Positions 42,134 through 52,716 of a DNA stretch of 64,000 bases are shown here, piece by piece. Position 1 is the first letter of the stretch, and the number at the start of each line of letters is the position of its first letter. Below the pieces are notes generated by a model that had not been told where the DNA came from, did not search any database, and saw only the letters and a program-made list of their open reading frames with translations. The translations under genes and the position numbers were made by a program. Source of the DNA: Macrostomum lignano (Eukaryota). Where the stretch lies: assembly GCA_002269645.1 (NCBI GenBank), contig NIVC01000412.1, positions 868,001 through 932,000 on the forward strand, given 5' to 3'.

Positions 42134-42442
42134 TTATTGTTTATCGCAGGTGTCTCCCAGTGTTGCCATGGAGACCAGATCCCCGGTTCGAATTAGAGCT
42201 TTGTCCACTTTGCCCAGCGGAGCGGCCAGGCCCCGGACGCACAGCGCCGTGAAGTTGATGTCCGCGGCCAGAAACTCATCGGCTTGCAGTGGCGGCCGGC
42301 GACAGCCGTGAAACCGGAGCGTCATCGGACGACCTTCGGCAGCTTCCAGAGCTCGAAGAAATCGTTTGCGCAGTTCGGCGCGCTGATCGACTGAGGCTGC
42401 CTGCTCCCCCTCAGCAGTAGCTTTTGTTGACGGCGAAGTCAT
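42134..42442 (-). CDS. GEMIN7: Gem-associated protein 7 (SMN complex), single exon, 102 aa
   Basis: QRAELRKRFLRAL..FLAADINFTALCVRGLAAPLGKVDKALIRTGDLVS matches recalled Gemin7 (LRERYLRSL..QTPIGVQAEALLRCSDIIS). Confidence 0.85.
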   Translation of the reverse strand: MTSPSTKATAEGEQAASVDQRAELRKRFLRALEAAEGRPMTLRFHGCRRPPLQADEFLAADINFTALCVRGLAAPLGKVDKALIRTGDLVSMATLGDTCDKQ

Positions 42443-42529
42443 TTGCAAGTGAACAAAATTTTACACTGGATTTAATCTTTGGTCTGCAATGGACAATCGA
42501 AATGGTTGAAGCTTTAGAAAAGACTACTA

Positions 42530-42900
42530 CAAAGAGTCAAATGACGTCAAGCTTTTATTAAGCACTAAGCTACTGTTCAGACGCATGACATCAGTTGCCA
42601 TTTTTAAGTATCATGCTTTTCTACAAAGAGTTGAACTGTATGACGTCAAGTGGCTATTTTTAGCATCAAGTTGCCAAGAATTTAACTGCATGACGTCAGT
42701 GGCTATTTTGAGCATCGCGCTAACAAGAGCTGAACTAGATGGCGTCAGTAGCTATTTTTAGCATCATTCTACCAAGAGCCGAACTGTATGACGTCGTGAC
42801 TATTTTTAGCATTCATTCTACCAAACGGCGAACTGCATGACGTCAGTTGCTATTCTTAGCATCATTCTACCAATAGACTAACTGCATGACGTCAATTGCT
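42530..42900. repeat. ~49-bp degenerate tandem repeat with TGACGTCA core
   Basis: About 8 units between the TM2D1 stop and the GEMIN7 ATG. Confidence 0.8.
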
Positions 42901-42978
42901 TTTTTTCAGCCTTACATAAATAGATGCTTGCATAATATCCCAGGACTCACTCAGTTCAGTAAGTTTTAAAAGCTATGA

Positions 42979-44128
42979 TTAGGACGTTCCACCAGTAAAC
43001 AGAGTATCGTTGCTAGCCGGTATCCGAGTGACCAACGGGCCGTAGTGCGGAGACACGTAGTGAGATTGATCAGCTGGCCTGACAATCTGCAAGCTAATTA
43101 ATATGACGTCCAACAGGTGCAAAAACCCGTAGCCGCCAAAGGTGAATAGCTTGGCCAAGCCAATAGCCGGATAGCCCAGATAGAATCTGTCCAAGCCGAG
43201 AAAGCCGGTGAAAACGGACAGCAGAACGGCCACGTGAAACTGTTTGCCGTTCGTCCAACGACAAGCGGTGGTCGATTGGAAACAGCGATTGGGGAACTGG
43301 CTGGCGCCGGATAGGGACTGCAAATGTTGAGTTTGAGAGCTTGCTTAAAATTACTCGTACCTTGAATGCATTACAGGCACAGATGAGGTCAGATGCTATT
43401 TTAGAACAGACACGCCAGCCATTAGGGATGAGGTCAGATGCTATTTTTAGAACAGACACGCCAGCCATTAGGGATGAGGTCAGATGCTATTTTTAGAACA
43501 GACACGCCAGCCATTAGGGATGAGGTCAGATGCTATTTTTAGGACAGAGACACGACAGCCAATAGGATGAGGTCAGATGCTATTTTTAGGACAGAGACAC
43601 GCCAACCAAACGGATGACGTCGGAATGCTATTTATAGAACACCAAAATATAGACAAATTCAACACTTAAAAGAATGAACAGAGAATGACGTCAGATACTA
43701 TTTTTAGGACATGTTTAAGAATCTCCAGAACACACTTTTACACTGAAAAGAAAAGCTTTCCCTACCGTCGGGCAGAGAAAGTCGCCAATGCAGGTGAGAT
43801 TATCTGCTAATTCGCACAGGACGGGAGCGAAGCCCTCCTTGCTGCAGTTCACAGCCTGCTGAGTGGCCGGATTAATGTCCGGTTCAGAGCACAAGTACTG
43901 TCCGGGACGCAGCTGGTCGCAAGACAGCCGACTCGATTTCGACGTCGACGGCCAATCAGCCGTGGCTGAAGAAGTCGGCGAAGCCGCCGACGACGAAGAA
44001 GATGCACTGGCTGAAGCCGATGGAATTGCTGTTAGCTGCAGGAGCAGAAAAAGCAACAGACAGGCAAACGCAGGCGAGTAGAGGCGAATTTGATTGAGAA
44101 TAATTTTGGCGAATGGATGATGGAGCCG
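42979..44128 (-). CDS. TM2D1: TM2 domain-containing protein 1 (BBP-like); exons 44128-43766, 43317-42979; no ATG in the genomic frame
   Basis: CDQLRPGQYLC.EP.I.PATQQAVNC, CRWTNGKQFHVAVLLSVFTGFLGLDRFYLGYPAIGLAKLFTFGG is the TM2D1 signature; phase-0 intron. Confidence 0.9.
43380..43710. repeat. ~46-bp tandem repeat in the TM2D1 intron
   Basis: (GATGAGGTCAGATGCTATTTTTAGAACAGACACGCCAGCCATTAGG)n. Confidence 0.9.
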
Positions 44129-44394
44129 CTGAAAACGAAAAAAGGCAGTTTTAGTTTGTGACTAATTAGTGAAAAATTAAAATGAACCTTTCCAGACACT
44201 GTAATAATCCGATATTTTTCAAGATTTTACATCCTTCTTCTAATCTACTAAAAGTAGACTATTGTGACTATTAAATTGAACAATGAATTAATGTTATCTA
44301 AGTAATAATTTTAATAGCAATATTTATAACTGATTATTCCCGCTCCAATGACCAGATGTGCAACGGACAGCTCAGCCGAAGCTTTTGCGCGGCG

Positions 44395-44545
44395 CCTCTG
44401 AAGACACCCTCAATTACCCCAGCTAATGCTGGCACCCATTTTACAGCTGGGTGAACTGAAGCAATGCAGAGTTAAGTGTCTTGCTTAAGGACACAACTTT
44501 TTTGAGTGGGATCGGGACTCGAACCCCGACCTTCTGGGTCTGGGG
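44395..44545 (-). mobile_element. tRNA-derived SINE with CORE-like central domain
   Basis: Minus strand: B-box GGTTCGAGTCC followed by GTGTCCTTAAGCAAGACACTTAAC..CAGCTGTAAAATGGG, resembling the CORE/Mermaid-type domain. (CT)n at 44576-44645 interrupts the head. Confidence 0.7.
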
Positions 44546-44573
44546 TTTTAATTAGTAACATTACATAATTCAT

Positions 44574-44644
<71 letters not shown>

Positions 44645-45289
44645 CATGTCCCCTGACTACCACGCTAGATAAATGAGCGTGGTAATTCTAAAAAAGTGAC
44701 TGATTTACTGGGGATAGTTTCTAAGAAACAGTTTGTGGTCGTTTCTAAGAAACTCAAATCTATATCGGTGGTCTTTTCTTACTCGTAGAAATTTATTTAT
44801 GCCATGCTGTTTTTAGAATGTGATACCTTGGACGTGTGTTTTTTATAATTTTATTTATTGCTGTCGTTAACTGATTTTTTATGACGGATTGACTATTTCT
44901 AAGAAACATACATTTTAAGGCCTTTTGCGCATCACTCGTAGTACTAAAACAAAATTAAAAAAATTAAATAAGATCGACCAGATAAACAGTAAACTTGGAC
45001 AATACGTTTTTACACTTTATTAACTCGAAGCCGGCATATGCGAAGTTTACAGAAAAAGTGCATGCAAAAGTACCAATCGAAGGTGCGAACAGTTTAGTTT
45101 CTAAAATAAGATACAGGCAAGATACCATTATCTACGCACCTTTCCAAAAAAATTGCAGGGTTAATTAAAAAGCAAAAGAAATGCGAGCGTGATTTTTACT
45201 TAAAAATTTAGCAATATTTATCAGCAACAAGGAATCCGTCAACTGTAACATTAGGATTCATATAACTAGCGAACATTGAGGGAGGGAAG

Positions 45290-45835
45290 CTGAGGGTGGG
45301 GTTGGCCAGAGCGAGTGTACATTGGGGGAAGGGGAGCTGGGTGGGGTTGGCCAGAGCGAGTGTACATTGGGGGAAGGGGAGCTGGGGTGGGGTTGGACAG
45401 AGCGAGTGTACATTGGGGGAAGGGGAGCTGGGGTGGGGTTGGCCAGAGCGAGTGTACATTGGGGGAAGGGGAGCTGGGGTGGGGTTGGACAGAGCGAGTG
45501 TACATTGGGGGAAGGGGAGCTGGGGTGGGGTTGGACAGAGCGAGTGTACATTGGGGAAGGGGAGCTGGGGTGGGGTTGGCCAGAGCGAGTGTACATTGGG
45601 GGAAGGGGAGCTGGGGTGGGGTTGGACAGAGCGAGTGTACATTGGGGGAAGGGGAGCTGGAGTGGGGTTGGCCAGAGCGGGTGTACATTGGAGGAAGGGA
45701 AGCTGGGGTGGGGTTGGCCAGAGCGGGTGTACATTGGGGGAAGGGGAGCTGGGGTGGGGTTGGACAGTGGGCGTGCATTGGGGAAGGGAAGCTGGGGTGG
45801 GGTTGGACAGAGCGAGTTTACATTGAGGGAAGTTC
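45290..45835. repeat. 46-bp G-rich minisatellite between UCKL1 and TM2D1
   Basis: (GTTGGCCAGAGCGAGTGTACATTGGGGGAAGGGGAGCTGGGGTGGG)n with four G-runs per unit. Confidence 0.95.
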
Positions 45836-46151: not shown

Positions 46152-49100
46152 TCATTCGCACACAACAGCCGTCTCGCACTCCGAACAGTCGTCAGTCTCT
46201 TCTCCAGCTCCATCGTCGCCGCTCAAACCTGACGCAGTCGAATCGGTGCCGAAATACCGATCGCCAAAGTTGCCCAGGCCCGGCTGGATTCGGCAGGCAG
46301 ACGACAGCACCGGATCCACGGCCGCTGCCACCAGACGGACACCGGGAAAAGCGTAGGCCACTGCGGCTAGGCCGGCTGCTGAGGCTAACAGGCAGCAGAA
46401 GGTGATGTTCTCTTCTTGGCAGTCGTGATCCAGTAGCACTCGGATGGCCATCATGGCCGCTGCGCCACTGGCAACTGTGGCGTCCATTAGCAGCACCTGC
46501 CAACCAATATAATATAGGTTTGTGCAGATTTACCTGCTAGCTAAGTTAGAGATGAAGGTAGAATTCTAGTGAGAAGTAGAGGTGGGGGTAGAACTCTATC
46601 TAGTGAGAAGTAGAGGTGGGGGTAGAACTCTATCTATTGAGAAGTAGAGGTGGGGTAGAACTCTATCTAGTGATTAGTAGAGGTGGGGGTAGAACTCTAT
46701 CTATTGAGAAGTAGAGGTGGGGTAGAACTCTATCTAGTGGGAAGTAGAGGCGGGGCAGAACTCTATCTATTGAGAAGTAGAGGTGGGGTAGAACTCTATC
46801 TAGTGAGAAGTAGAGGCGGGGCAGAACTCTATCTATTGAGAAGTAGAGGTGGGGTAGAACTCTATCTAGTGAGTAGTAGAGGTGGGGGTAGAACTCTATC
46901 TAGTGAGAAGTAGAGGCGGGGCAGAACTCTATCTATTGAGAAGTAGAGGTGGGGTAGAACTCTATCTAGTGAGAAGTAGAGGCGGGCAGAACTCTATCTA
47001 TTGAGAAGTAGAGGTGGGGGTAGAACTCTATCTAGTGAGAAGTGGAGGCGGGGCAGAACTCTATCTATTGAGAAGTAGAGGTGGGGTAGAACTCTATCTA
47101 GTGAGTAGTAGAGGTGGGGGTAGAACTCTATCTAGTGAGAAGTAGAGGCGGGGCAGAACTCTATCTATTGAGAAGTAGAGGTGGGGTAGAACTCTATCTA
47201 GTGAGAAGTAGAGGCGGGGCAGAACTCTATCTATTGAGAAGTAGAGGTGGGGGTAGAACTCTATCTAGTGAGAAGTGGAGGCGGGGCAGAACTCTATCTA
47301 TTGAGAAGTAGAGGTGGGGTAGAACTCTATCTAGTGAGAAGTAGAGGCGGGGCAGAACTCTATCTATTGAGAAGTAGAGGTGGGGTAGAACTCTATCTTT
47401 ATTATTATTAGAGGCAGGGGGGTTGTGTGCACCCTGGCGCACTTTAAGCGACATAGGCACACAACCGGCGAGAGGCATTACTGCCCATTCCGCCGACTCC
47501 CCTGAGCAGGCATACAAGCGCGCGGATACGTACGCAGGCACACACTCACACAGGAGTGTACAGCGGCCCTAACTTTATTTATCATTAGGCATGTACACTT
47601 CACTGCGCCTTGGGGGGTTGGCTCTCAAGGCCGTTAATTGCACGAGCAGAGCCAAGCCGAGATTCCAATTCAGTCCCAAATTAACGTGACTACACTTGGA
47701 ATCGAGCCTGGGTCGCTGGCACACCAGAGCCTGCGCTAGACCGCTGGGCTACGGCCCCCCTTAGAACTCTATCTAGTGAGAAGTAGATGTGGGGACAGGA
47801 ATCTAAAAGACTTAAACCAAACGATTTAAACTTTAATACCAGAGTATTAATATTATACGAGAACACGGCCACCCACCTGAGCCTCTGATGTGCCGGGGGG
47901 CAGGCGCAGATAGTGCAGCTCCGGCTCACCAGTGTCTCTATTAGTCTGTATGAGTATCTTCCCTAATCTGGCGTCCTTAGCAACCGCTGCCAGGGCCGGT
48001 TCCATTGTTTCGCCAGCGCGTAGAATACTGACTCCCACTAGTATGGGATCCAGACGGCGCAAGCCCCTGTGGGATTGCAGTGAGCACGTTTGTATTATTC
48101 AATTTGACTCCACTGCCTATCTGGGTCCATCTTGGCACTCTAGTTGCCACCCACGCATCCATCTTGTCACCCTAGCTACCACCCACGCATCCATATTGTC
48201 ACCCTAGCTACCACCCACGCATCCATATTGTCACCCTAGCTACCACCCACGCATCCATATTGTCACCCTAGCTACCACCCACGCATCCATATTGTCACCC
48301 TAGCTACCACCCACGCATCCATATTGTCACCCTAGCTACCACCCACGCATCCATATTGTCACCCTAGCTACCACCCAAGCATCCATATTGTCACCCTAGC
48401 TACCACCCACGCATCCATATTGTCACCCTAGCTACCACCCACGCATTTATATTGTCACCCTAGCTACCACCCACGCATCCATATTGTCACCCTAGCTACC
48501 ACCCACGCATCTATATTGTCACCCTAGCTACCACCCACGCATCCATATTGTCACCCTAGCTACCACCCAAGCATCCATATTGTCACCCTAGCTACCACCC
48601 ACGCATCCATATTGTCACCCTAGCTACCACCCACGCATCCATATTGTCACCCTAGCTACCACCCACGCATCCATATTGTCACCCTAGCTACCACCCACGC
48701 ATCTATATTGTCACCCTAGCTACCACCCACGCATCCATATTGTCACCCTAGCTACCACCCAAGCATCCATATTGTCACCCTAGCTACCACCCACGCATCC
48801 ATATTGTCACCCTAGCTACCACCCACGCATCCATCTTGTCACCCTAGCTACCACCCACGCATTTATATTGTCACCCTAGCTACCACCCACGCATCCATAT
48901 TGTCACCCTAGCTACCACCCACGCATCTATATTGTCACCCTAGCTACCACCCACGCATCCATATTGTCACCCTAGCTACCACCCAAGCATCCATATTGTC
49001 ACCCTAGCTACCACCCACGCATCCATATTGTCACCCTAGCTACCACCCACGCATCCATATTGTCACCCTAGCTACCACCCACGCATCCATATTGTCACCC

Positions 49101-50334
49101 TAGCTACCACCCACGCATCCATATTGTCACCCTAGCTACCACCCAAGCATCCATATTGTCACCCTAGCTACCACCCACGCATCCATATTGTCACCCTAGC
49201 GACCACCCACGCATCCATCTTGTCACCCTAGCTACCACCCACGCATCCATATTGTCACCCTAGCTACCACCCACGCACACATCGTGGCACTCTACATTAG
49301 CTACAACTCCCTGGCTACATGATACGATCAGGATACGATAACTTGGATACTCAATCAATGGTCGACCCTTTAAGCACTCCATCACCAAATTATCCCACGG
49401 TATAAAAACTGGACTGGATTTCAATCCCACTAACTTGTAGGCCGATCCATCTGGCAGTTGAACTTCAACCGGTGCCCAGGCCTTCTCCGGCAGCTCTGCC
49501 ATGGCGTACTCAAACAGCAGCCGCATCAATCTGTTTGAATAGAATACGAACTCATCTCTAGCCGTGTCCCTGTTGCGCAACAGGGTTAACAGATGGCGCA
49601 CCTGCTGCGTCTGAGGCAGAATGCGTACGCTGGATGGGAGGCGTTCCGGTTTCTGTGAGGACGGGTTGAGATTGGGTATGGATAGCCATATGGTAGATGG
49701 GAGTAAGGATGAGCTAGGCAAGGATGCAATTTCATTTTACCATCTACTTAGTACAATCTGTACTCTGAGTTCTGCTTCTCTAATCTCATCCCAGCGTAGT
49801 ATCTACTCTCACCCTGAACCCTCTACTCTTATCCTAACCTATCTACTCCAATTCGGATCTCTCTACTCTCATACTAAACTTATCTACTCTCACCCGATCT
49901 CTACCCTCATCATCCGGCCTGATATATCTACTCTCTACCCCCTGATATCTCTCTCTACTCTCTCCTGCCGATCTCAGCGCACTCACCTGAAAAATATCGC
50001 CATAAGCCTCAGCCAATTGAGATCGCGTACTGACACCCCGCAGCACAAGCTGATTGCGCACGTGCCTACAGATCAGATCGATAGCCACCTGATTGTGGCC
50101 ACCCCTAGGTACAATTATGTCAGCTTTGCACCTGGTCGGCGCGATAAACTCGTCAAAGCTGGGCTTCACAAATTTTTCGTAGCTCTCAAGCACGCTGGCA
50201 ACGCTGCGACCGCGCTCGCTGATGTCACGGAGTAGCCGGCGGGCCAGGCACTCGTCTTCGTCTGTGTCCACAAATACCTGCGCGGTTTAATAAATGACTC
50301 AATAATAGCTGAGGTTGACGGGCTCAGGGTGGGT

Positions 50335-50380
<46 letters not shown>

Positions 50381-50477
50381 GAGACAGACAGGCAGAGAGA
50401 CAGATAGACAGACAGACAGACAGACATACACTAAGACAGGCAGACAGGCAGACAGACAGACAGACAGACAGACACTA

Positions 50478-50530
<53 letters not shown>

Positions 50531-50649
50531 CTAAGACAGACAGACAGACAGACAGAGAGACAGACAGGCAGAGAGACAGATAGACAGACAGACACTAAGA
50601 CAGACACACAGACAGACTGACAGACAGACAGACAGACAGACAGACACTA

Positions 50650-50682
<33 letters not shown>

Positions 50683-50685
50683 CTA

Positions 50686-50722
<37 letters not shown>

Positions 50723-50769
50723 TACACTAAGACAGGCAGACAGGCAGACAGACAGACAGACAGACACTA

Positions 50770-50802
<33 letters not shown>

Positions 50803-50805
50803 CTA

Positions 50806-50838
<33 letters not shown>

Positions 50839-50881
50839 CTAAGACAGACAGACAAGACAGACAGACAGACAGACAGACAGA

Positions 50882-50936
<55 letters not shown>

Positions 50937-52528
50937 GCCAGACAGACAGACAGACACAGACAATAGGACAGACAGGCAGACAGACAGACAGACAGACAGA
51001 CACAGACAATAGGACAGACAGGCAGACAGACAGACAGCCAGACAGACATACACTAAGACAGGCAGACAGACAGACAGACAGACAGGCAGACAGACAGACA
51101 GACAGATAGACGACAGACAGACAGACAGGCAGACAGACAGACAGACAGACACAAACAATAGGACAGACAGGCAGGCAGACAGACAAGCAAAAATGACCAA
51201 TGACGTGAGTTGATCAGTACAAAAACGTCCTACTCCCCGAATCGTACCTTCAAATCAATGAGATCCAGCAGTCGTTTGTCGCAGAAAGCCAAAATGCCTT
51301 CAAAGATGACAACATTGGCGCCGTAGATAATCTGAGTATTGTCGGGCACGCGGGCGTTGCTGGCGAAGTCGTACACGGGCACGCGGACCTGCTTGCCCTG
51401 TTTGAGCCTGGCCAGGGTCTCAACCAGCAGCTCAATGTCGAATGCGCACGGATGATCGAAGTTGAAATTATTCGATTCGATTAGATGCGTCTCTTCGGGC
51501 GTGGCGTCACGGTAATAGGAGTCCATGCTGAGCAGGGACACCCAGCGCTGGCGAAGGCGCTCGATTATCGACCTGAGTAAGCGTTGAATGTGCGTTGGCG
51601 ATTCTAAGAAAGTGACCAATTTATTGGGGAAAGTTTCTAAGAAGCAGGTTTAAAAACTGGTTTCTAAGAACACCTACTTTAGGGAGGCGTTTCTAAGAAG
51701 CAACCGACTGATTTACTGGGATTTTTATCAGGACACAGAAGAATTTAAGGGTAATTATTTCATAGAAATTGATTTTTTTCTACACCGGTTCTCAGAAATT
51801 GTTGTACTCTAGGCTGATTCTTAGAAACTGGTTTATTTTAATTGGGTTGGTTCTTAGAAATATATTTTGATAGACCGATTCTTAGAAGCTGGTATTTAAA
51901 AATGATTCTTAGAAACTTATTTATTCTACTAGGCTGATTCTCAGAAAATGGATTTATTGAAGGCTGGTTTGTAGAAATAAAAAATCAGTTTAGCATATGG
52001 ACTTTTCTTGACCGAGTCTTAGAAATCGATTTATTCTAGGCGGATTCTTAGAAACTGATTCATGCAATTTAAAAAAAGCGAACCGACTATTGTAAATTGA
52101 AGTCGTCTTTAAAGAGTTTCCCGATTTTATTGAATGCTTTGAGAGAGAAGCCAGCCTCAAAAAAATATTATTATGATTTTCTTGGAAATGCAAATTCCAA
52201 CACAACGGACCAATCAAAGTTATCCCCTACATTTTAAATAATCACAGCTGTAATATATTCAAATTTCACACCTGGCCACTGTAGTCTTCCCCGAAGCGCT
52301 GGCGCCGCACAGGCCAATTACAAACGATTGTCGGACGGCGCCGCCATCCGCGCCAAACCAGGGCGGCCGACCGGCAGTGAACACTCGGCACTCCGGCGCG
52401 CCGTCCAGTTGCAACACCGATTGCATCTTGTCAGCGCTGGTGCTGGTGAGGCGACGCCGACGTCGGCTACCATTGAGATGCTGGTGCTGGTGCTGCCGAG
52501 GCTGCGTTGGTGACGTCATTTTTTGCAT
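46152..52528 (-). CDS. UCKL1: Uridine-cytidine kinase-like 1 (UCK + UPRTase domains); exons 52528-52272, 51572-51248, 50277-49987, 49652-49435, 48066-47877, 46496-46152 (~541 aa)
   Basis: P-loop [78 protein letters not shown]; all splice phases compatible. Confidence 0.95.
46555..47398. repeat. 33/34-bp minisatellite with alternating variants in UCKL1 intron 5
   Basis: (AGAACTCTATCTA[G/T]TGAGAAGTAGAGG[T/C]GGGG[T/C])n. Confidence 0.95.
47399..47761 (-). mobile_element. Full-length tRNA-derived SINE with 13-bp TSD
   Basis: Head GGGGGGCCGTAGCCCAGCGG..GGCTCGATTCC (A/B boxes), (TAA)n tail, TSD TAGAACTCTATCT at 47386-47398 and 47762-47774. Confidence 0.85.
48145..49278. repeat. 32-bp minisatellite in UCKL1 intron 4
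   Basis: (CCACCCACGCATCCATATTGTCACCCTAGCTA)n. Confidence 0.95.
50336..51184. repeat. (GACA)n microsatellite filling UCKL1 intron 2
   Basis: Long imperfect tetranucleotide tract. Confidence 0.97.
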
Positions 52529-52716
52529 GAAAATCAGCAGTCATACTACTTATTAGTAGTTTTGCATCATTATTGCAAATTTTCAATCTTAAGAGGAATT
52601 TTACGTACTTGCATTTGAATACATGTCGATAGATTTAATTTGACTGTAGAGTACTGCATAGGTTAACTGAAGGGAGCCGGATAGTCATTTCACTAACATA
52701 TTGCTAAAATACATGG

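What the first reader, a model, noticed from the sequence alone, without database searches (positions are those of the whole stretch)
42979..44165. Met-less TM2D1 gene: initiator AUG probably supplied in trans by the flatworm spliced leader
Seen in sequence: the whole TM2D1 frame (both exons) has no ATG. An in-frame TAG lies at 44164-44162. A strong acceptor TTTCGTTTTCAG ends at 44129, and the next base starts the frame in phase 0 (CGG CTC CAT.. = RLHHPFAKIILNQIRLYSPAFACLLLFLLLQLTAIP, a plausible signal peptide). Established: flatworm SL exons end in AUG, which can act as the initiator Met. Inference: SL-AUG + exon gives M-RLHHPF.., making expression dependent on trans-splicing.
Basis: partly seen in the sequence, partly recalled or inferred. 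Interest (0 to 1): 0.88.

Follow-up and report, generated by a model that had tools for sequence, protein, structure and literature searches.

The report
Flatworm TM2D1 gene lacking own ATG
A conserved membrane-protein gene (TM2D1) of the flatworm Macrostomum lignano has no start codon of its own and almost certainly borrows the AUG at the end of the trans-spliced leader, a mechanism shown in flatworms in 2006, so this is a tidy new example and not a new kind of biology.

Summary
The window is Macrostomum lignano assembly Mlig_3_7 (NIVC01000412.1). On the minus strand lies a two-exon TM2D1 gene (44128-43766 and 43317-42979, 233 codons) with no in-frame ATG. An in-frame TAG sits 36 nt upstream, and exon 1 starts in phase 0 straight after ttttttcgttttcag.

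The published M. lignano spliced leader ends in ...TTGCATG. SL plus exon 1 therefore reads ATG CGG CTC... = MRLHHPF..., which puts a Met in front of a normal signal peptide that aligns with those of orthologues.

GenBank models of the two other genomic copies start exactly at this acceptor and are flagged 'partial'. Two UniProt models also lack a Met. The most divergent copy differs at 6 CDS sites, all synonymous, so the gene is under purifying selection. No upstream ATG exon with a consensus donor exists in 2.4 kb.

No RNA reads could be examined, so trans-splicing at this site is inferred, not shown. The mechanism is established (Cheng et al. 2006; over 40 schistosome cDNAs need the SL AUG) and has been noted for Macrostomum. 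This is a new member of a known kind with low interest. Its main use is to correct a 'partial' annotation. One extra curiosity: the 702-nt CDS has no ATG in any frame.

The parts
44129..44144 (-). Polypyrimidine tract plus AG acceptor (cttttttcgttttcAG). This is the proposed SL trans-splice acceptor.
   Evidence: 92% pyrimidine, the best of all AGs within 130 nt either side. It matches the M. lignano trans-splice motif [T/C]TNCAG and is identical in all three genomic copies.
44162..44164 (-). In-frame TAG 36 nt upstream of exon 1. It closes the frame, so an unspliced transcript cannot supply an in-frame ATG.
   Evidence: There is no ATG between this TAG and 44128.
44129..44196 (-). Last 68 nt of the outron. 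This is the only upstream stretch still collinear with the divergent copy L001.
   Evidence: Homology to L001 breaks at about 44196 and resumes at 44403.
43766..44128 (-). TM2D1 exon 1 (121 codons, phase 0 at both ends). It encodes RLHHPF..., the signal peptide and the Cys-rich ectodomain.
   Evidence: GenBank CDSs PAA60561.1 and PAA90267.1 start at the homologous base.
44006..44128 (-). Signal-peptide coding part. With the SL AUG it reads M-RLHHPFAKIILNQIRLYSP (n-region), AFACLLLFLLLQLTAI (h-region), PSASA (c-region).
   Evidence: Hydropathy peak at residues 19-37. It aligns with the orthologues' signal peptides. Synonymous-only differences occur at codons 13, 19, 32 and 39 against L001.
43318..43765 (-). 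GT..AG intron (448 nt) carrying a 46-nt tandem repeat at 43382-43641.
   Evidence: Intron length varies among the copies (448, 449 and 1013 nt).
42979..43317 (-). TM2D1 exon 2 (112 codons plus TAA at 42981-42979). The TM2 domain is encoded at about 43248-43102, including the DRF motif.
   Evidence: (TM2 at residues 145-193).
46152..52525 (-). Upstream same-strand gene, UCKL1-like (PRK + UPRTase), whose stop lies 2,023 nt before the TM2D1 acceptor. It is a possible operon partner.
   Evidence: L003 1592-7965; window position = 54117 - L003 position. The locus tag Mlig008918g3 for TM2D1 marks it as the third gene of one transcriptional unit.

Best explanation
This is the M. lignano orthologue of TM2D1 (biscotti / beta-amyloid-binding protein family). 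Its pre-mRNA may be part of a polycistronic unit with the upstream UCKL1-like gene. It is processed by spliced-leader trans-splicing at the acceptor ending at 44129. The 35-nt SL exon ends in AUG, and joining it to C44128 creates AUG-CGG-CUC..., so the SL supplies the initiator Met of a 234-residue precursor, MRLHHPF.... The Met sits in front of a cleavable signal peptide. An mRNA that has not been trans-spliced has no AUG anywhere in the coding region and an in-frame stop upstream, so it should yield no TM2D1. Shown here: the sequence anatomy, the host identity, the SL sequence from the literature, the frame compatibility, purifying selection, and the absence of a credible cis exon with an ATG. 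Inferred: that the SL is actually joined at this site, and that ribosomes start at the SL AUG.
For: (1) The window is M. lignano Mlig_3_7. (2) The SL is CGGTCTCTTACTGCGAAGACTCAATTTATTGCATG followed by a GTAAG donor, and 30% of genes are trans-spliced. (3) SL plus exon gives one ORF of 234 aa from the SL AUG, and that AUG is the only one before the stop in any frame. (4) The acceptor has the best polypyrimidine tract nearby and fits [T/C]TNCAG. (5) The annotation pipeline (TBONE) sets 5' gene ends from mapped SL-containing reads. The GenBank CDSs of copies L001 and L002 start exactly at the base after the AG and are 'partial'. The window's own model starts 12 nt later and is also 'partial'. Two independent UniProt models also lack a Met. 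(6) The names Mlig008918g3 and Mlig019512g1 follow the convention for genes cut out of multi-gene transcriptional units. (7) All 6 differences between the L001 CDS and the window CDS are synonymous, two of them in the codons before the hydrophobic core. CDS divergence is 0.85% against 3.5-8% in the flanks. (8) Orthologues start with a Met 0-17 residues before the same hydrophobic segment, so nothing but a Met is missing. (9) In 2.4 kb upstream there is no ATG-ORF ending in a phase-0 GT[AG]AG donor. (10) Precedent: the SL AUG has been shown to act as initiator in flatworms. It is in frame in 28% of S. mansoni trans-spliced cDNAs and required by more than 40 of them, with conserved use in Echinococcus. 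The Macrostomum SL ATG has been described as a translation start codon.
Against: No SL-bearing read or cDNA for this gene could be examined. An exact look-up of the M-prefixed protein found nothing. The annotated CDS at the window's own locus starts 12 nt inside the exon, not at the acceptor, so annotated 5' ends are not always SL-defined. The neighbouring RING gene's 'partial' starts do not abut an AG either. Two other in-frame AGs, ending at 44162 and 44036, could also accept the SL. The SL AUG has a weak context (U at -3, C at +4). Flatworm acceptors are often shared between cis- and trans-splicing, so a minor cis-spliced isoform cannot be excluded.
Confidence: 0.8

Rival explanations
1. 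An unannotated upstream exon carries the real ATG and is cis-spliced to the acceptor at 44129, either as the only form or as an isoform alongside the SL form.
For: Flatworm 3' splice sites are extensively shared between cis- and trans-splicing. The window's gene is the third gene of a longer transcriptional unit, so upstream RNA exists. 101 ATG...|GT phase-0 combinations exist upstream by chance.
Against: None of the 101 has a GT[AG]AG donor. Most lie in a 46-nt tandem repeat or inside the last UCKL1 exon. Three GenBank models and two UniProt models all lack such an exon. Exon 1 already starts with a complete signal peptide that aligns with orthologue N-termini, and an N-terminal extension would bury it.
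Confidence: 0.07
2. The SL is joined at a neighbouring in-frame AG, either the one ending at 44162 (giving MSQTKTAFFRFQRLHH...) or the one ending at 44036 (giving MLTAIPSASA...). The SL AUG still initiates, but on a different N-terminus.
For: Both AGs leave the SL AUG in frame with no stop. The AG ending at 44036 has an 85% pyrimidine tract.
Against: The 44162 site (aattAG) does not fit TTNCAG and has a poorer tract. Splicing at 44036 would delete the hydrophobic core of the signal peptide, and its pyrimidine richness is simply Leu/Phe codons. The annotated CDSs start at 44128 in two copies.
Confidence: 0.05
3. Translation starts at a near-cognate codon inside exon 1 (ATT at codons 10, 11 and 14; CTG/TTG at codons 24-25), independently of the SL.
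For: Non-AUG initiation is documented in SL-bearing mRNAs of other taxa. The SL AUG context is weak.
Against: A cognate AUG 33 nt from the cap lies in frame upstream of all of these codons. Starts at CTG or TTG would remove the n-region and part of the h-region of the signal peptide. Codons 13 and 19 show synonymous-only change, which suggests they are translated, though with only two sites.
Confidence: 0.04
4. The locus is a decaying or mis-assembled copy, and a Met-containing functional TM2D1 lies elsewhere in the genome.
For: M. lignano is a hidden polyploid with many duplicated loci.
Against: All three assembled copies encode the identical Met-less protein with intact splice sites. 6 of 6 substitutions are synonymous. 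The homology search found no other M. lignano TM2D1 cluster.
Confidence: 0.03

Closest known systems
Flatworm mRNAs that use the SL 3'-terminal AUG as initiator Met (Cheng, Cohen, Ndegwa & Davis 2006, J Biol Chem 281:733; 'slORFs' of slORFfinder)
   Same: The SL exon ends in AUG. The acceptor sits directly in front of an ORF that is in phase 0 and has no AUG of its own. The orthologue N-terminus is restored only if the SL AUG is used.
   Different: The species is the free-living macrostomorph M. lignano, whereas the documented gene sets come from Schistosoma and Echinococcus. This TM2D1 gene was not found named as an example in the literature searched. The CDS is free of ATG in all three frames, a property not reported as a feature of the class.
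TM2D1 / biscotti (CG10795) / beta-amyloid-binding protein, TM2 domain family PF05154
   Same: Signal peptide, conserved C..L.PGQY.C..P.I...TQ..C ectodomain, two TM helices with the DRFYLGYPAIG motif, and 40-50% identity to animal orthologues.
   Different: There is no genome-encoded initiator and no internal Met at all, whereas orthologues have several. A Ser/Ala/Thr-rich linker follows the signal peptide.
Downstream genes of SL-resolved operons in M. lignano (Ustyantsev & Berezikov 2021)
   Same: A same-strand upstream gene, a TTNCAG acceptor, and a gene name indicating a multi-gene transcriptional unit.
   Different: The intergenic distance is 2,023 nt. After subtracting about 630 nt of tandem repeats and a 200-nt copy-specific insertion it is still around 1.2 kb measured from the upstream stop codon, which is at or above the 1-kb operon threshold. 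Operon membership is therefore unproven.

Membership tests
SL-AUG-initiated flatworm mRNA (Cheng et al. 2006 class) | The host has an SL RNA whose exon ends in AUG. | tested here: met
   The window is 100% identical to M. lignano NIVC01000412.1. The published SL ends in ...TTGCATG followed by a GTAAG donor. No SL RNA gene lies in this window, as expected.
SL-AUG-initiated flatworm mRNA (Cheng et al. 2006 class) | The mRNA is SL trans-spliced at the acceptor immediately 5' of the ORF. | tested here: inconclusive
   Support is indirect only. The acceptor fits the motif. The pipeline defines ends from SL reads, and the partial CDSs of two copies start exactly after the AG. The window's own model starts 12 nt later. 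No reads were available.
SL-AUG-initiated flatworm mRNA (Cheng et al. 2006 class) | [quoted passage not shown] | tested here: met
   The in-silico SL+exon junction gives a 234-aa ORF from the SL AUG.
SL-AUG-initiated flatworm mRNA (Cheng et al. 2006 class) | No genome-encoded AUG can give an N-terminus matching the orthologues. | tested here: met
   There is no ATG in any frame of the CDS. An in-frame TAG lies upstream. No consensus-donor ATG exon occurs in 2.4 kb upstream. Orthologue alignment shows that only the Met is missing.
SL-AUG-initiated flatworm mRNA (Cheng et al. 2006 class) | Ribosomes initiate at the SL AUG in vivo. | not testable with these tools
   This needs ribosome profiling or reporter assays.
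TM2D1 (TM2 domain-containing protein 1) | A TM2 domain with the DRF motif between two TM helices. | tested here: met
   Pfam PF05154 at E=8.2e-13, residues 145-193. DRFYLGYPAIG is invariant in the alignment. Hydrophobic segments lie at 148-164 and 186-201.
TM2D1 (TM2 domain-containing protein 1) | An N-terminal signal peptide and a conserved Cys-rich ectodomain, with closest relatives named TM2D1 and not TM2D2 or TM2D3. | tested here: met
   The named top hits are TM2D1/biscotti/CG10795. Conserved C71, G77, Q78, Y79, C81, C96, C106, C114 and C141.
M. lignano SL-resolved operon | Adjacent same-strand genes with a repeat-adjusted intergenic distance under 1 kb and a trans-spliced downstream gene. 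| tested here: inconclusive
   The strand is the same and the gap is 2,023 nt, about 1.2 kb after removing repeats and before subtracting the unknown 3' UTR of the upstream gene.

The most novel reading that the evidence does not exclude
The complete absence of AUG in all three frames of the TM2D1 coding region, conserved in all three copies, is selected and not accidental. It would make translation strictly conditional on trans-splicing, a fail-safe against translating unprocessed polycistronic RNA, and it would tolerate leaky scanning past the weak-context SL AUG. In the same window, the UCKL1-like copy whose acceptor CAG has become a genomic in-frame ATG would then show that SL-supplied and genome-encoded initiators can replace each other during evolution.
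Probability: 0.1. Interest if true: 0.5.

Novelty: new member of a known kind. Interest (0 to 1): 0.22.

Why it matters
The main value is practical. Three GenBank proteins (PAA60561.1, PAA90267.1, PAA83683.1) are labelled 'partial', and two UniProt entries (A0A1I8IQ82, A0A1I8G3Q7) are Met-less and wrongly fused to a Gemin7-like ORF. In fact the gene is complete once the SL is added. This illustrates that flatworm gene sets built after trimming the SL systematically mislabel SL-AUG-dependent genes. A genome-wide count in M. lignano of such genes (CDS open to an SL acceptor in phase 0, with no nearby ATG) has not been published to my knowledge. It would extend the Neodermata data to a basal free-living flatworm that can be made transgenic. 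TM2D1 is a conserved gene linked to Notch signalling and amyloid, so its obligatory dependence on trans-splicing could serve as a simple reporter of SL function. None of this changes current understanding.

Tried and rejected
(a) Exact look-up of the M-prefixed 234-aa protein, hoping for a transcript-derived ORF that includes the SL, found nothing in the collection.

(b) Supplementary gene tables that might flag Mlig019512 or Mlig008918 as trans-spliced: none are held for PMC8629364, and there are no hits in those held for PMC5730564.

(c) Cheng et al. 2006 itself is not held, so it is cited through three papers that summarise it.

(d) A search for an SL RNA gene in the window found none with up to 3 mismatches.

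(e) A homology search with the UCKL1 C-terminal exon, meant to recover the neighbours' locus tags, returned nothing at my too-strict E<=1e-30. That was a wasted search.

(f) tRNA and Rfam scans of the outron/intergenic region found no hits. The tRNA-like look of 44400-44550 was not substantiated.

(g) The downstream Gemin7-like ORF was checked as a second SL-AUG-dependent gene and rejected. It has its own ATG at 42441, and the fusion seen in UniProt uses an acceptor inside its CDS.

(h) The pseudogene reading was rejected on 6/6 synonymous changes and identical proteins in three loci.

Full report
**What is in the sequence**

- A polypyrimidine tract and acceptor, cttttttcgttttcAG, ends at 44129.
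- The next base, C44128, is the first base of a codon (CGG CTC CAT CAT CCA TTC... = RLHHPF...).
- Exon 1 runs to 43766 (363 nt) and is followed by GTAGGG.
- A 448-nt intron ends in ...catttgcAG at 43318.
- Exon 2 runs from 43317 to 42979 (339 nt, TAA at 42981-42979).
- Both junctions are phase 0.
- The 233 codons contain no ATG.
- An in-frame TAG lies at 44164-44162, with no ATG between it and the exon, so an unspliced RNA cannot supply an in-frame start.

The 702-nt CDS has no ATG trinucleotide in any frame. That occurs in 0.8% of codon-order shuffles and 0.04% of mononucleotide shuffles. Lack of an in-frame ATG alone occurs in 6.8% of shuffles.

**Identity of gene and host**

The protein carries a Pfam TM2 domain (E=8e-13, residues 145-193). 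Its best named relatives are TM2D1, biscotti and CG10795 proteins of molluscs, annelids and arthropods at 40-50% identity.

The only near-identical cluster is from Macrostomum lignano. The window is 100% identical over 21 kb to GenBank NIVC01000412.1 of assembly Mlig_3_7 (locus L003). The window therefore corresponds to NIVC01000412.1:868001-932000.

Two further genomic copies exist: L001 on NIVC01002137.1 and L002 on NIVC01000118.1. This is expected for a hidden polyploid.

**How existing annotation treats the gene**

- GenBank PAA60561.1 and PAA90267.1 (copies L001 and L002) are exactly the 233 residues RLHHPF...GGTS, are labelled 'partial', and start at the base after the AG.
- PAA83683.1, the model at this window's own locus, starts 12 nt later (PFAKII...) and is also 'partial'.
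- Two UniProt models from an independent annotation (A0A1I8IQ82 and A0A1I8G3Q7) start 6 nt upstream of the acceptor (FQRLHH...). They are also Met-less and are fused to a downstream Gemin7-like ORF.

No annotator found a start codon or an upstream coding exon.

The Mlig_3_7 annotation pipeline (TBONE) sets 5' gene boundaries from mapped, SL-trimmed reads and cuts multi-gene transcriptional units at those sites. Genes cut from one unit are named .g1.g2 and so on. The window's gene is Mlig008918g3, the third gene of its unit.

A CDS that is open to the first base of its transcript, where that base directly follows TTTTCAG in two copies, is hard to explain by a transcription start site. This is the strongest evidence for trans-splicing here, but it is indirect.

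**The spliced leader**

M. lignano has one 35-nt SL, CGGTCTCTTACTGCGAAGACTCAATTTATTGCATG, followed in the SL RNA gene by a GTAAG donor. About 30% of genes receive it, and the enriched motif at trans-splice acceptors is [T/C]TNCAG.

The acceptor here (TTTCAG) fits the motif. It also has the highest pyrimidine content (92%) of all AGs between 44260 and 43990.

Joining SL and exon in silico gives ...UUGC-AUG-CGG-CUC..., a single 234-codon ORF. The SL AUG is the only AUG in the mRNA before the stop codon.

**Is anything other than a Met missing?**

Hydropathy shows three hydrophobic segments: residues 19-37, 148-164 and 186-201. This is the signal-peptide plus two-TM layout of TM2D1.

In an alignment with nine orthologues, the first segment aligns with their signal peptides. 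Their initiator Met lies 0-17 residues upstream of it. The predicted precursor has a basic n-region (MRLHHPFAKIILNQIRLYSP), a 16-residue h-region and a PSASA c-region. No conserved N-terminal block is absent.

**Is the gene functional?**

The most divergent copy, L001, differs from the window at 6 of 702 CDS positions. All six are third-position synonymous changes, at codons 13, 19, 32, 39, 53 and 206.

Flanking and intronic DNA differs by 3.5-8% and by large insertions. All copies keep both splice sites, the acceptor and the AUG-free state. This argues against a pseudogene. The two synonymous sites at codons 13 and 19 weakly support translation of the codons ahead of the hydrophobic core.

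**Search for a cis-spliced ATG exon**

Between 44129 and 46600 on the minus strand there are 101 combinations of an ATG-initiated open frame ending in phase 0 at a GT. None has the M. lignano donor consensus GT[AG]AG. Most fall inside a 46-nt tandem repeat (45273-45832) or inside the last exon of the upstream gene.

Only the 68 nt directly upstream of the acceptor remain collinear with L001, and they contain no ATG. A minor cis-spliced isoform cannot be excluded, because flatworm acceptors are often shared between cis- and trans-splicing. Nothing in the sequence supports one.

**Context**

The upstream same-strand gene is a UCKL1-like uridine kinase/UPRTase whose stop is at 46152. The 2,023-nt gap contains 560 + 69 nt of tandem repeats and a roughly 200-nt copy-specific insertion.

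The repeat-adjusted distance is about 1.2 kb measured from the stop codon. That is close to the 1-kb threshold used to call M. lignano operons. Operon membership is therefore plausible but unproven.

No SL RNA gene, tRNA or Rfam family lies in the region.

**Comparison with what is known**

All reported flatworm SLs end in AUG, which can serve as an initiator (Cheng et al. 2006, as summarised).
- In S. mansoni the SL AUG is in frame in 28% of trans-spliced cDNAs, and more than 40 cDNAs need it.
- In Echinococcus granulosus, 143 of 187 SL-bearing clusters are full length if the SL ATG is used.
- Use of the SL AUG is conserved for 10 of 15 orthologues examined.

The mechanism is therefore known, and known to the Macrostomum community. 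What is new is only this particular gene. I did not find it named in the literature searched, and public databases mislabel it as partial.

**Verdict**

- Observation: confirmed.
- Interpretation: supported, with confidence about 0.8. The missing piece is direct RNA evidence.
- Novelty: new member of a known kind.
- Interest: low, about 0.2.

The most novel reading still open is that the all-frame AUG depletion is selected, making translation strictly dependent on trans-splicing. A neighbouring paralogue-specific CAG-to-ATG change would then show interchange between SL-supplied and genomic initiators. I put this at about 10%.

Noticed in passing
window 52525-52530 (minus strand); L003 1586-1592 versus L001 3143-3149 and L002 1997-2003: In copies L001 and L002 the annotated CDS of the upstream UCKL1-like gene starts right after gattttcCAG|CAAAAAATGACG. 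An SL AUG would be in frame there (M-Q-K-M-T-S...). In the window's copy the same site reads gattttcATG|CAAAAAATG. A CA->AT dinucleotide change destroys the AG acceptor and creates a genomic in-frame ATG exactly where the SL AUG would sit. It could be a real allele or homeologue difference, or an assembly or polishing artefact caused by SL-bearing reads.
   Followed up: partly
window 42979-44128 (CDS only), also L001 and L002: The spliced 702-nt TM2D1 CDS has no ATG in any of the three frames, and the mature protein has no Met at all, whereas orthologues have several. This occurs in 0.8% of codon shuffles. The test was post hoc, so the result is only suggestive.
   Followed up: partly
window 42134-42448 (minus) and about 42990 / 42420: A Gemin7-like ORF (PF11095 in the UniProt fusion models) lies about 540 nt downstream of the TM2D1 stop on the same strand. 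It is not annotated in GenBank and has its own ATG at 42441. UniProt A0A1I8IQ82 and A0A1I8G3Q7 join TM2D1 to it by a donor inside the last TM2D1 codons (ACTG|GTGGAA) and an acceptor inside the Gemin7 CDS (caacaaaag|CT). This probably reflects a read-through or polycistronic RNA, or a model artefact.
   Followed up: partly
window 43382-43641, 42619-42906, 45273-45832, 46565-47398, 44576-44644: The gene is surrounded by dense tandem repeats. There is a 46-nt unit x5.6 in the TM2D1 intron and a related 49-nt unit x5.9 (sharing the core TGACGTCA...CTATTTTTAG) in the 3' flank. A 46-nt G-rich unit x12 and a (CT)34 microsatellite lie in the outron, and a 33-nt unit x25 lies in an intron of the upstream gene. 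Intron length differs between copies (448 vs 1013 nt).
   Followed up: no
window 44196-44403: A stretch of about 200 nt just upstream of the conserved outron end is present in the window and L002 but replaced by about 700 nt of unrelated repeat in L001. It looks superficially tRNA/SINE-like, but ARAGORN and Rfam found nothing.
   Followed up: partly
window 40626 region (L003 13491; L001 13404; L002 13508): The 'partial' CDS starts of the downstream RING-finger gene differ between the three copies: 6 and 9 nt before, and 6 nt after, an ATG (CAGCGGATGGACCGA). They do not abut an AG. This shows that 'partial' 5' ends in this annotation are not always SL-defined. At the window's locus both this gene and TM2D1 start 12 nt later than in L001.
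   Followed up: no
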